This document shows, piece by piece, positions 59,201-60,517 of a stretch of DNA of 64,000 nt. The notes beneath the pieces were generated by a model, which saw only the letters and a program-made list of their open reading frames with translations, searched no databases and had not been told where the DNA came from. The position numbers and the translations under genes are program-made. Position 1 is the stretch's first letter. Each line of letters starts with the position of its first letter. The stretch spans positions 9,796,001 through 9,860,000 of the forward strand of contig OZ365111.1 of the NCBI GenBank assembly GCA_977030845.1, read 5' to 3'. The DNA is from Fimbriosthenelais zetlandica. Taxonomy: Eukaryota.

Positions 59201-59257
59201 CATTTCCCACCGTTTAAAAGAAATAATTTTCTATAACATTTTCTTGCAGAGTCCAAC

Positions 59258-60517
59258 ATGAAACTGTACCAAGAATCTCTCACCTTCTTCAAAGAGAATA
59301 ATGTGAGCGATTTTGACATTGTCATTGTCGGTGCTGGATTGTCTGGATGTGTGTTTGCAGAGCAATATGCCCGCTACACGGACAAAAAAATATTGGTGGT
59401 AGACAAACGTGACCACCTTGCTGGGAACTGCTATGACTTCGTTGATGAAAATGGAATTCTCATGAACAAATACGGACCCCATCTTTTCCATACTAACTAT
59501 GATCAGGTTTGGGACTATGTGACCGAGTTCGAGGAATGGGTACGTTGGGAACATGAAGTCCTGGCTTTTGTCGATGGCCAGTTTGTTCCTGTTCCAGTCA
59601 ACATTACCACTGTGAACAAAGTATGTGGTCAGAACATCATTAACGAAAATGAAATGGATACTTGGTTGAAGATGACACAGGTGAAGTTCAAGACAATCAC
59701 TAACAGTAAGCAAATGGCATTGTCAAGGGTGGGACCAACACTCTACAATAAGATGTTCAGGAATTATTCCATCAAGCAGTGGAGCAGAGACCCAGAAGAC
59801 CTGGCACCTGAAGTTCTCCAGAGGATTCCCATCAGGAATAATTTTGATGGGAGATATTTTAGTGATCGTTACCAGGCACTTCCCAGACATGGCTACACTT
59901 GCTTCTTTAAGAAACTGCTTCACTCTGACCAGATAACTGTCGTCTTGCAACTCGATTTCTTCCAGGTCAAAGATGACATCTCCTGTGAAAAACTCATCTA
60001 CACTGGACCTATAGATCATTATTATTCACACCTTGGCTATGAACCTCTAGCCTATAGGTCTCTTAAGTTTGTGAGAGAAAGCTACAAGAACTGTTTCTTT
60101 TATCAACCAAAGTCGGTAGTAAATTACCCCGAAGAAAAATATCCATTCACACGGATTGTCGAATACAAGCACTTCCTTAATCAGAAGTCAGACCACACAA
60201 CAATAGTCAAAGAATTTGGGCAAGAGGAAGGAGAGCCATATTACCCAATCTTGGATGAGAAAAATAAAGAATTGTATAAAAACTACCAGGAAAGAGCAAA
60301 GGAGGAAGAAGATGTTCTATTTGCGGGCCGTCTTGCTAATTTTAAATATTTCAACATGGACGAAGCAATCAATAATTCTTTGAATATGTTCAAAGAGAGT
60401 GTGTTACCAGGTATCATGAACATTTATACCCGAGTCAACAATGGTGATGGATTTGAACAAGGAGAAAACTCAATAGGGCTACATAAGGTACCAGACATGA
60501 CCAATGTGGACAAATAA
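59258..60517 (+). CDS. glf: UDP-galactopyranose mutase, prokaryotic (glf)-type, intronless CDS, 419 aa
   Basis: FAD-binding DIVIVGAGLSG, KYGPHLFHTN, RYFSDRYQALP, YTGPID, YRSL, TRIVEYKHF, EPYYP and GRLANFKYFNMD all follow the bacterial UGM motif order. Acceptor ttttcttgcag at 59249, 8 nt before the ATG. Confidence 0.95.
   Translation: MKLYQESLTFFKENNVSDFDIVIVGAGLSGCVFAEQYARYTDKKILVVDKRDHLAGNCYDFVDENGILMNKYGPHLFHTNYDQVWDYVTEFEEWVRWEHEVLAFVDGQFVPVPVNITTVNKVCGQNIINENEMDTWLKMTQVKFKTITNSKQMALSRVGPTLYNKMFRNYSIKQWSRDPEDLAPEVLQRIPIRNNFDGRYFSDRYQALPRHGYTCFFKKLLHSDQITVVLQLDFFQVKDDISCEKLIYTGPIDHYYSHLGYEPLAYRSLKFVRESYKNCFFYQPKSVVNYPEEKYPFTRIVEYKHFLNQKSDHTTIVKEFGQEEGEPYYPILDEKNKELYKNYQERAKEEEDVLFAGRLANFKYFNMDEAINNSLNMFKESVLPGIMNIYTRVNNGDGFEQGENSIGLHKVPDMTNVDK

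What the first reader, a model, noticed from the sequence alone, without database searches (positions are those of the whole stretch)
59250..60517. Bacterial-type UDP-galactopyranose mutase domesticated in an animal genome (candidate horizontal transfer)
UGM makes UDP-galactofuranose. Vertebrates lack it, and the well-studied eukaryotic enzymes (fungi, trypanosomatids, nematodes) are a distinct, longer subtype. This protein has the size and motifs of prokaryotic Glf (KYGPHLFHT, YFSDRYQ, TRIVEYKHF, GRLANFKYFNMD) with FAD and substrate motifs intact. Its CDS is intronless while neighbouring host genes have 8-10 coding exons. It is embedded in host-like AT-rich DNA and has a spliceosomal acceptor 8 nt before the ATG (candidate donor at 58693), arguing for real integration with a gained 5' UTR intron. 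It implies possible galactofuranose glycans in this animal (inference).
Basis: partly seen in the sequence, partly recalled or inferred. Interest (0 to 1): 0.78.

Follow-up and report, generated by a model that had tools for sequence, protein, structure and literature searches.

The report
Worm gene for microbial sugar enzyme
An animal genome, probably a segmented worm's, carries an intact, long-conserved gene for an enzyme that makes a sugar normally found in microbes; the gene came by horizontal transfer, its closest relatives lie among giant viruses rather than ordinary bacteria, and similar transfers into animals have already been published.

Summary
Window 59258-60517 (+) is one intact 419-aa ORF. 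It scores above NCBI's trusted cut-off for prokaryotic-type UDP-galactopyranose mutase. It keeps 17 of 20 published active-site residues, including both essential arginines.

The gene is truly integrated. It is single-copy, 9.86 Mb into a 55.7-Mb contig, between intron-containing animal genes. A dispersed host repeat lies about 150 nt upstream of the ATG. The mitochondrial gene order matches the annelid pattern as I recall it.

Relatives at 72-86% identity occur in two other samples. One of them holds at least 13 copies. Their upstream regions share a splice-acceptor-like site. Changes that alter the protein are far rarer than silent changes, so selection has conserved the protein (dN/dS 0.12-0.19 among paralogs).

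The "bacterial" origin needs refining. The animal clade (100/100) lies inside a subfamily dominated by giant-virus contigs and protist-like enzyme fusions. It lies far from typical Bacteroidota enzymes. A Bacteroidota-like donor is still not rejected (AU p=0.12).

No transcription data were available. No candidate galactofuranosyl-transferase was found.

A 2026 paper already reports such transfers in Ciona and lists spiralians. I therefore class this as a new member of a known kind, with a new viral link.

The parts
59258..60517 (+). Intronless CDS of a prokaryotic-type UDP-galactopyranose mutase (419 aa, stop codon included)
   Evidence: ORF. TIGR00031 above cut-off. PF03275 and PF13450. 3hdq at 2e-102. 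Single copy in the genome.
59330..59347 (+). Codons for GAGLSG (residues 25-30), the GxGxxG dinucleotide-binding motif of the FAD domain
   Evidence: PF13450 covers residues 23-91. The residues were printed. G25, G27 and G30 are invariant in the alignment.
59822..59824 (+). Codon of R189, the counterpart of the mobile-loop arginine (DrUGM R198 / KpUGM R174)
   Evidence: Mapped from the alignment, residues checked. The residue list is Table 2 of PMC3322874.
60152..60154 (+). Codon of R299, the counterpart of the second essential arginine (DrUGM R305 / KpUGM R280)
59240..59249 (+). Splice-acceptor-like tract (TTTCTTGCAG) ending 8 nt before the ATG
   Evidence: Sequence. The same kind of site is present 7-21 nt before the ATG in L003, L001, L002, L138 and L139. 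Background rate 16-18%. No RNA evidence.
58693..58699 (+). Donor-like GGTAAGT; a candidate 5'-UTR exon would end at 58693, giving a 556-nt intron (58694-59249)
   Evidence: This is a sequence pattern only, not verified.
59191..59198 (+). TATA-like TATTTAAA 60 nt before the ATG; an alternative promoter that would need no intron
   Evidence: Read directly. Inference only.
58971..59105 (.). Copy of a short dispersed host repeat, about 150 nt upstream of the ATG
   Evidence: The own-genome DNA search gave 394 first-look candidates. The 40 scored include the query's own locus. The other 39 lie on many contigs at 76-88% identity.
60697..60853 (+). Three AATAAA/ATTAAA polyadenylation-like signals 180-335 nt after the stop codon
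   Evidence: This is a sequence pattern only.
50075..53492 (-). Exons of the upstream host gene, an inositol-polyphosphate 5-phosphatase type
   Evidence: Three separate ORF pieces match successive parts of PF22669.

Best explanation
The ORF is a real, functional, horizontally acquired gene for a prokaryotic-type UDP-galactopyranose mutase, fixed in the nuclear genome of an animal that is probably a pleistoannelid worm. Shown: the sequence belongs to the family, has an intact active site, is physically integrated, has conserved relatives in other animal-like genomes, and is under purifying selection. Inferred mechanism: a cytosolic FAD enzyme in which the reduced flavin attacks C1 of UDP-galactopyranose and contracts the ring to give UDP-galactofuranose. 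That product would feed a still unidentified transferase that puts galactofuranose on the worm's glycans. Origin: the gene belongs to a UGM subfamily carried mainly by giant viruses (Nucleocytoviricota MAGs) and by long UGM-glycosyltransferase fusions. It does not belong to the mainstream bacterial Glf group. The transfer happened once, before three sampled lineages diverged. After transfer the gene gained an N-terminal extension of about 18 aa and probably a 5'-UTR intron. In one lineage it multiplied to at least 13 copies.
For: Family membership: TIGR00031 341.9 bits against a 303.75 cut-off; PF03275 1.5e-67; 3hdq 2e-102. The 33 best fold matches are all bacterial mutases, E 1e-29 to 1e-41 (32 UDP-galactopyranose mutases plus the C. 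jejuni UDP-GalNAc mutase). Fungal and trypanosome enzymes score 1e-12 at 13-17% identity. Seventeen of the 20 DrUGM active-site residues listed in PMC3322874 Table 2 are identical, including R189 and R299. Integration: the window lies at C11:9.80-9.86 Mb of a 55.7-Mb contig. The gene is single-copy. It is flanked by 5-phosphatase and annexin exons. A host dispersed repeat lies about 150 nt upstream. Host: the mitogenome has all genes on one strand, with tRNA order and spacings that fit the pleistoannelid pattern. Conservation: 86% identity in ERR14368245, and 72-75% in 13 or more loci on 0.36-3.2-Mb contigs of ERZ25767047. pN is 0.12-0.20 while synonymous sites are saturated. dN/dS is 0.12-0.19 among paralogs. 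Phylogeny (LG+C20): animals 100/100. Their sister is L013, a compact contig with GT90, 98/90. Next comes a fusion-protein clade, 99/90. All lie inside a 71-row clade, 100/100, that holds 29 IMG/VR giant-virus rows. 183 viral contigs encode relatives. The nearest non-animal hits sit on virus-like contigs.
Against: There is no transcript or read evidence: no run was listed, so expression, the intron and assembly continuity rest on comparative arguments. No galactofuranosyl-transferase candidate was found. DUF3431 and DUF707 gave no hit (the controls were silent, so this is inconclusive). GT90 is present only as two multi-exon host genes. The GT61 domain of a fusion protein gave no hit. The donor is not resolved. 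The AU test does not reject animals plus a Bacteroidota-MAG subclade (dlnL 22.3, p=0.124). The sister contig L013 is unclassified apart from a feature-based lead. The bootstrap had not fully settled. The AF2 model is only moderate (pLDDT 70.6). The annelid assignment rests on my memory of the gene order.
Confidence: 0.75

Rival explanations
1. Direct transfer from a bacterium (Bacteroidota-like) into the worm lineage. Under this reading the giant viruses are parallel recipients of the same bacterial subfamily, not the route.
For: Kaistella (54% identity) branches at the base of the subfamily. Three of 301 sampled Bacteroidota genomes carry 52-54% relatives. A 9-row subclade holds proteins named Bacteroidales or Bacteroidota MAG, and one on a 5.2-Mb contig. 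The AU test does not reject joining this subclade with the animals (p=0.124). GT90 also occurs in Bacteroides (control).
Against: The best tree puts the animals with L013 and the fusion clade (98/90 and 99/90), not with the bacterial subclade. The GT90 next to L013's UGM is nearest to clusters that are 90% Nucleocytoviricota. Most Bacteroidota UGMs are only 40-46% identical and form the outgroup.
Confidence: 0.3
2. Contaminant or mis-assembled microbial or viral DNA, not part of the animal genome.
For: No reads could be laid on the locus. The CDS is intronless and of prokaryotic type.
Against: The locus is 9.86 Mb inside a 55.7-Mb contig. Host exons lie on both sides. A host-specific dispersed repeat lies about 150 nt upstream. 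The GC content is host-like. Divergent relatives sit in Mb-scale eukaryote-like contigs of another sample with the same acceptor-like site. No other microbial ORF lies nearby.
Confidence: 0.02
3. Ancient eukaryotic gene inherited vertically and lost in nearly all other animals.
For: Relatives exist in protist-like fusion proteins. One comes from a large NCBI assembly. Chlorophyta clusters appear in the Atlas.
Against: Among 5.8 billion clustered proteins, only four clusters exceed 62% identity. All four belong to one tight clade. The gene is intronless. The published distribution in animals is extremely patchy (PMC13390645).
Confidence: 0.03
4. The gene is retained but does not supply galactofuranose glycans. 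It might act on another UDP-sugar (UDP-arabinose or UDP-GalNAc), or be expressed only marginally.
For: No dedicated transferase or partner was found. A C. jejuni homologue with the same fold is a UDP-GalNAc mutase (4mo2). No galactofuranose report for annelids turned up.
Against: 17 of 20 UGM active-site residues are retained, with His at the DrUGM H88 position. Purifying selection acts across species and paralogs. The score is above the equivalog cut-off.
Confidence: 0.15

Closest known systems
Prokaryotic UDP-galactopyranose mutase (Glf; EC 5.4.99.9), e.g. Deinococcus radiodurans UGM, PDB 3hdq/3hdy
   Same: The length of the catalytic core, the three-domain fold, the FAD motif and the active-site residues. 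The HMM score is above the equivalog cut-off.
   Different: It is encoded in an animal chromosome. It has an N-terminal extension of about 18 aa and a C-terminal tail of about 35 aa that is not conserved among the animal copies. It has a eukaryotic-style upstream region. There is no adjacent glycan gene cluster.
Horizontally acquired bacterial-type UGM genes of Ciona (KY21.Chr5.483, KY21.Chr14.742), with IPR004379 hits in Mytilus and an ostracod (PMC13390645)
   Same: A single-exon prokaryotic-type UGM in an animal chromosome with a patchy distribution, interpreted as HGT. The paper's Table 1 already lists 'Spiralians' as holders.
   Different: The host lineage is different (annelid-like). I could not obtain the Ciona or Mytilus sequences, so a shared or separate origin is untested. 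None of them appears among the 120 best hits, where only four clusters exceed 62% identity. The paper names a bacterium as the source, whereas here the nearest relatives are giant-virus-associated.
Giant-virus (Nucleocytoviricota MAG) UGMs in glycosylation gene clusters
   Same: The same UGM subfamily (100/100 clade), at 50-60% identity.
   Different: The viral genes sit beside or fused to GT1, PLOD-type GT, GT90 and DUF3431. The worm kept only the mutase. No NCLDV capsid gene was found in the genome (control silent).
Eukaryotic-type UGM (GLF) of fungi, kinetoplastids and nematodes (e.g. A. fumigatus 3utf family, T. cruzi 4dsg)
   Same: The same reaction and the same overall fold class.
   Different: Only 13-17% identity, with Foldseek E around 1e-12 against 1e-41 for bacterial enzymes. 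The eukaryotic inserts and the long C-terminal extension are lacking.

Membership tests
Prokaryotic-type UDP-galactopyranose mutase (TIGR00031 / PF03275) | Full-length match to the equivalog model above its trusted cut-off | tested here: met
   341.9 bits against 303.75, model positions 2-376 of 378. PF03275 positions 1-203 of 203.
Prokaryotic-type UDP-galactopyranose mutase (TIGR00031 / PF03275) | N-terminal Rossmann FAD-binding motif GxGxxG | tested here: met
   GAGLSG at residues 25-30.
Prokaryotic-type UDP-galactopyranose mutase (TIGR00031 / PF03275) | The two arginines essential for activity, and the substrate-binding Tyr/Trp/His/Asn set | tested here: met
   R189 and R299 are present. 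17 of 20 residues in Table 2 of PMC3322874 are identical to DrUGM. M166 and V287 fall at positions that already vary among the characterised bacterial enzymes. S171 is a conservative change at a position where all four of those enzymes have Thr.
Prokaryotic-type UDP-galactopyranose mutase (TIGR00031 / PF03275) | Three-domain UGM fold without the eukaryotic inserts | tested here: met
   The AF2 model (pLDDT 70.6) has bacterial pyranose-furanose mutases as its top 33 PDB matches (32 UDP-galactopyranose mutases plus the C. jejuni UDP-GalNAc mutase), TM 0.64-0.69 by target. The model is of moderate confidence.
Prokaryotic-type UDP-galactopyranose mutase (TIGR00031 / PF03275) | Catalysis of UDP-Galp to UDP-Galf | not testable with these tools
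   This needs an enzyme assay.
Eukaryotic-type UGM (fungal/kinetoplastid/nematode GLF) | A chain of about 470-520 aa with extra helices and a long C-terminal extension, and sequence kinship to AfUGM/TcUGM | tested here: not met
   13-17% identity and E around 1e-12. Absent from the phmmer hits at 1e-3.
Horizontally acquired functional gene in an animal | Physical linkage to host genes and repeats on a large contig | tested here: met
Horizontally acquired functional gene in an animal | Phylogenetic nesting inside a non-animal clade with strong support | tested here: met
   A 71-row clade at 100/100 with viral, bacterial and protist-like rows around a 100/100 animal clade.
Horizontally acquired functional gene in an animal | Orthologs in related hosts under purifying selection | tested here: met
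Horizontally acquired functional gene in an animal | Transcription and splicing in the host | not testable with these tools
   No sequencing run was listed. Only a conserved acceptor-like site is available as evidence.
Endogenous giant-virus insertion (multi-gene) | Neighbouring viral genes or hallmark genes such as the major capsid protein | tested here: inconclusive
   There are no viral ORFs around the gene. PF04451 gave no hit in the genome, but the control genomes were silent too.

The most novel reading that the evidence does not exclude
A giant virus, not a bacterium, handed an annelid lineage the enzyme that makes UDP-galactofuranose. These worms would then decorate their own glycans (mucus, cuticle or tube) with a sugar that animal innate immunity treats as a microbial signature. 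One relative amplified the gene to at least 13 copies.
Probability: 0.3. Interest if true: 0.75.

Novelty: new member of a known kind. Interest (0 to 1): 0.5.

Why it matters
Galactofuranose is generally regarded as absent from most animals, and lectins such as intelectins are reported to recognise it as a microbial sugar (my knowledge, not tested here). An animal that keeps a UGM under selection for a long time probably makes it. That would add a monosaccharide to the annelid glycan repertoire. It would also raise the question of how self-recognition is avoided. The phylogeny points to the giant-virus gene pool as a possible source of animal metabolic genes. It also points to viral DUF3431, GT90 and GT61 partners as candidate galactofuranosyl-transferases. 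The basic phenomenon, a bacterial-type UGM acquired by animals, was published for Ciona in 2026, so this extends a known pattern rather than founding one.

Tried and rejected
- **Sequencing runs.** Two searches (RNA, any) listed nothing (the first attempt failed as busy). Therefore read laying could not be used, and expression, the 58693/59250 junction and read continuity are untested.
- **Transferase partners in the own genome.**
  - Pfam DUF3431, Pfam DUF707 and a profile built from viral DUF3431 proteins gave no hit. The controls were silent, so absence is not shown.
  - GT90 gave only two multi-exon host genes.
  - The GT61 domain of fusion protein P0150 gave no hit. The many host GT61 ORFs are therefore not close kin of the fusion partner.
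- **NCLDV capsid.** No hit, and the control was silent.
- **Synteny.** Nothing beyond the CDS matches between the window and paralog loci L001 and L002 within 10 kb.
- **GTDB contig scan with the single protein.** It found only four loci. I replaced it with a 301-genome Bacteroidota sample.
- **Naming the host by protein search.** I abandoned this. Mitochondrial genes contain TGA codons, and the longest stop-free piece (199 aa of nad5) falls outside the length filter.
- **ARAGORN in the default mode.** It found no mitochondrial tRNAs. The -mt mode did.
- **Ciona and Mytilus sequences.** I could not obtain them. No supplement is held.
- **Earlier scan notes.** They added nothing.
- **The 124-aa minus-strand ORF at 58794-59168.** It has no Pfam match. 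It overlaps the dispersed repeat, so I treat it as chance.

Full report
**1. The observation**

Window 59258-60517 (+) is a single open frame of 419 codons.

- Pfam finds GLF (PF03275, 1.5e-67, whole model) after an NAD_binding_8 Rossmann domain.
- NCBIfam's equivalog model TIGR00031 scores 341.9 bits against a trusted cut-off of 303.75, over positions 2-376 of 378.
- The closest solved structures are all bacterial. The best is Deinococcus radiodurans UGM (3hdq, 2e-102).
- An AlphaFold model built on a 10-row alignment is of moderate confidence (pLDDT 70.6).
- The model's 33 best PDB matches are all bacterial mutases: 32 UDP-galactopyranose mutases and the C. jejuni UDP-GalNAc mutase (E 1e-29 to 1e-41).
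- Aspergillus and Trypanosoma enzymes follow at about 1e-12 and 13-17% identity.

I mapped the 20 active-site residues that PMC3322874 (Table 2) lists for DrUGM through the alignment. Seventeen are identical.

- The identical ones include both arginines whose alanine mutants are inactive in the Klebsiella enzyme. Here these are R189 and R299.
- M166 and V287 differ at positions that already vary among the characterised bacterial enzymes.
- S171 is a conservative change at a position where all four of those enzymes have Thr.

The enzyme class is therefore the prokaryotic type, and the catalytic apparatus looks intact.

**2. Is it really in the animal's genome, and which animal?**

- The window is C11:9,796,001-9,860,000 of a 447-Mb, 79-contig assembly. 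The contig is 55.7 Mb long, and the gene is single-copy.
- Upstream, on the minus strand, three ORF pieces match successive parts of the inositol-polyphosphate 5-phosphatase catalytic domain.
- About 15 kb downstream there are four annexin-repeat exons.
- A stretch of about 135 nt at 58971-59105, about 150 nt before the ATG, is a dispersed host repeat. The search gave 394 first-look candidates. Of the 40 scored, 39 lie elsewhere, on many contigs, at 76-88% identity.
- The CDS has 40.5% GC, close to its surroundings. I consider contamination excluded for practical purposes, although no reads were available.

Contig C79 is a 15,667-bp mitogenome. Its cox1 has TGA as a sense codon, and all its genes lie on one strand. 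The tRNA order and the sizes of the gaps between tRNAs give this order: cox1-N-cox2-D-atp8-Y-cox3-Q-nad6/cob-W-atp6-R-H-nad5-F-E-P-T-nad4L/nad4-C-G-M-rrnS-V-rrnL-L1-A-L2-nad1-S2-I-K-nad3-S1-nad2.

From my own knowledge, this is the conserved pleistoannelid arrangement with two tRNA moves. PMC10405356 confirms that such a dominant pattern exists, but does not print it. The host is therefore probably an annelid. This is an inference.

**3. Relatives in other animals**

Among 5.8 billion clustered proteins, only four clusters exceed 62% identity.

- One, at 86%, comes from a 2.35-kb Logan contig of ERR14368245.
- Three, at 72-75%, come from the long-read assembly ERZ25767047. That assembly holds at least 13 distinct copies on contigs of 0.36-3.2 Mb at about 37-43x. 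These contigs are gene-poor and have 35-40% GC, so they are host-like. Some of the copies could be haplotigs.

All these proteins share an N-terminal extension of about 18 aa (MKLY...) that the five virus-like and bacterial proteins aligned with them lack. P0054, the sister of the animal clade, has an extension of similar length but a different sequence.

In all six loci I inspected, a pyrimidine tract plus CAG lies 7-21 nt before the ATG. Such a motif occurs in 16-18% of random 25-nt stretches of this window. Its retention across lineages whose synonymous sites are saturated is suggestive of a conserved 5'-UTR intron. It is not proof. A strong donor-like GGTAAGT at 58693 would give a 556-nt intron. 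A TATA-like TATTTAAA at 59191 offers an alternative reading with no intron.

Selection:
- Between species, pN is 0.12-0.20 while pS is saturated.
- Among paralogs with unsaturated dS (0.15-1.0), dN/dS is 0.12-0.19.
- The gene has therefore been kept under purifying selection for a long time.
- No synteny with the window was seen around two paralogs.

**4. Where did it come from?**

- The nearest non-animal hits (about 60-62% identity) sit on compact contigs rich in ORFans. Their neighbours include T5orf172, RING, ankyrin, HMG-box, DUF2738 and GT90 genes.
- An IMG/VR scan found 183 viral contigs encoding relatives. Many are named GVMAG (giant-virus MAGs) and reach 336 kb, at up to 60% identity.
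- In one 22%-GC GVMAG contig the UGM lies inside a glycosylation cluster: two GT1 genes, a PLOD-type GT, UGM and DUF3431.
- By contrast, in 301 sampled Bacteroidota genomes most UGMs are only 40-46% identical. Only three genomes reach 52-54%.

A careful IQ-TREE analysis (79 rows, LG+C20 PMSF) gives the following.
- Animals are monophyletic at 100/100.
- Their sister is L013/P0054 at 98/90. This is an unclassified compact contig. Its adjacent GT90 is, by Atlas features, nearest to clusters that are 90% Nucleocytoviricota (a lead only).
- That pair is sister, at 99/90, to a clade of long UGM fusions with GT61 or DUF707. One of these comes from a very large NCBI assembly.
- Everything lies inside a 100/100 clade of 71 rows that includes 29 giant-virus rows.
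- Kaistella is the basal branch of that clade. Mainstream Bacteroidota enzymes form the outgroup.

There are caveats. A 9-row subclade containing proteins named as Bacteroidales or Bacteroidota MAGs is nested in the same clade. An AU test does not reject uniting it with the animals (dlnL 22.3, p=0.124). The bootstrap had not fully converged.

My reading is that the gene is 'prokaryotic-type' in architecture but belongs to a subfamily circulating mainly among giant viruses and their eukaryotic hosts. A viral or protist-associated donor is favoured, at roughly 45-55%. A Bacteroidota-like donor remains possible, at about 30%.

**5. What does it do?**

The mechanism is inferred from the family. 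The reduced FAD N5 attacks the anomeric carbon of UDP-Galp, and the ring contracts to give UDP-Galf. The protein has no obvious signal peptide in my reading of its N-terminus, which points to a cytosolic enzyme.

The downstream step is missing.
- The viral partners are DUF3431 (adjacent in L011 and L014, fused in P0147 and P0148), GT90, GT61 and DUF707. None has a detectable close counterpart in the worm genome. Several of these blanks are uninformative because the controls were silent.
- I found no report of galactofuranose in annelids.

Production of UDP-Galf for an unknown glycan is therefore the best-supported function. It remains unproven.

**6. Comparison with what is known, and novelty**

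PMC13390645 (Genome Biol Evol 2026) already describes two single-exon bacterial-type UGM genes in Ciona as HGT. The paper shows their expression in blood and mesenchyme cells. It notes IPR004379 in three Mytilus species and an ostracod. Its Table 1 lists 'Spiralians' and '(Echinoderm)' as holders.

The kind of event is therefore known. The following are new here:
- an annelid-like lineage with a deep, selected clade;
- a family expansion to at least 13 copies in one relative;
- a conserved acceptor-like site before the ATG;
- the placement in the giant-virus-associated subfamily rather than among ordinary bacterial Glf.

I could not obtain the Ciona or Mytilus sequences, so I could not test whether they share this origin.

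**Verdict.** This is a new member of a known kind, of moderate interest.

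Noticed in passing
L014:7119-7928, L011:8135-8875; proteins P0147, P0148: In giant-virus contigs a DUF3431 (PF11913) gene directly follows the UGM, and in other proteins DUF3431 is fused to its C-terminus. This uncharacterised domain is a candidate galactofuranosyl-transferase or obligatory partner.
   Followed up: partly
Proteins P0149, P0087 (GT90), P0150 (GT61), P0151 (DUF707); L013:121-942: The same UGM subfamily is repeatedly fused or adjacent to different glycosyltransferase families. 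This suggests modular two-step 'make and transfer Galf' enzymes in viruses or protists.
   Followed up: partly
G000:C25:28180352-28189234 (L140, L142, L143) and about 14 other loci: The worm genome holds at least 17 GT61-family (PF04577) hits, most within long stop-free frames of 450-900 aa. Three lie in tandem on C25. One is a 471-aa type-II-membrane-like ORF. This is unusually many and apparently intronless for an animal. They are not close to the GT61 domain of the UGM fusion protein.
   Followed up: partly
window 58971-59105: A short dispersed repeat of about 135 nt with hundreds of copies across the genome at 76-88% identity. It is SINE- or MITE-like.
   Followed up: partly
ERZ25767047 contigs (L001, L002, L138, L139 and nine more proteins, P0122-P0132): A related host genome carries at least 13 UGM copies in two subgroups (dS about 0.9-1.0 between groups, 0.15-0.37 within). 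All are under purifying selection. Some may be haplotigs.
   Followed up: partly
G000:C79 (L126+L127), 13618-14548: The mitogenome has the annelid-like order, but trnG lies between trnC and trnM, and trnS2 lies after nad1. It also has a stretch of about 930 nt between trnS2 and trnI that is either the control region or nad1. I did not annotate the protein genes individually.
   Followed up: no
Tree (P0021, P0049, P0065, P0092, P0094): A Bacteroidota-MAG subclade is nested inside the giant-virus-dominated UGM clade. This implies virus-bacterium exchange, or mis-binned contigs.
   Followed up: no
window 55270-55750: A GC-richer patch (about 46%) with overlapping ORFs of about 70-107 aa on both strands that encode similar peptides. 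It looks like an inverted or palindromic repeat.
   Followed up: no
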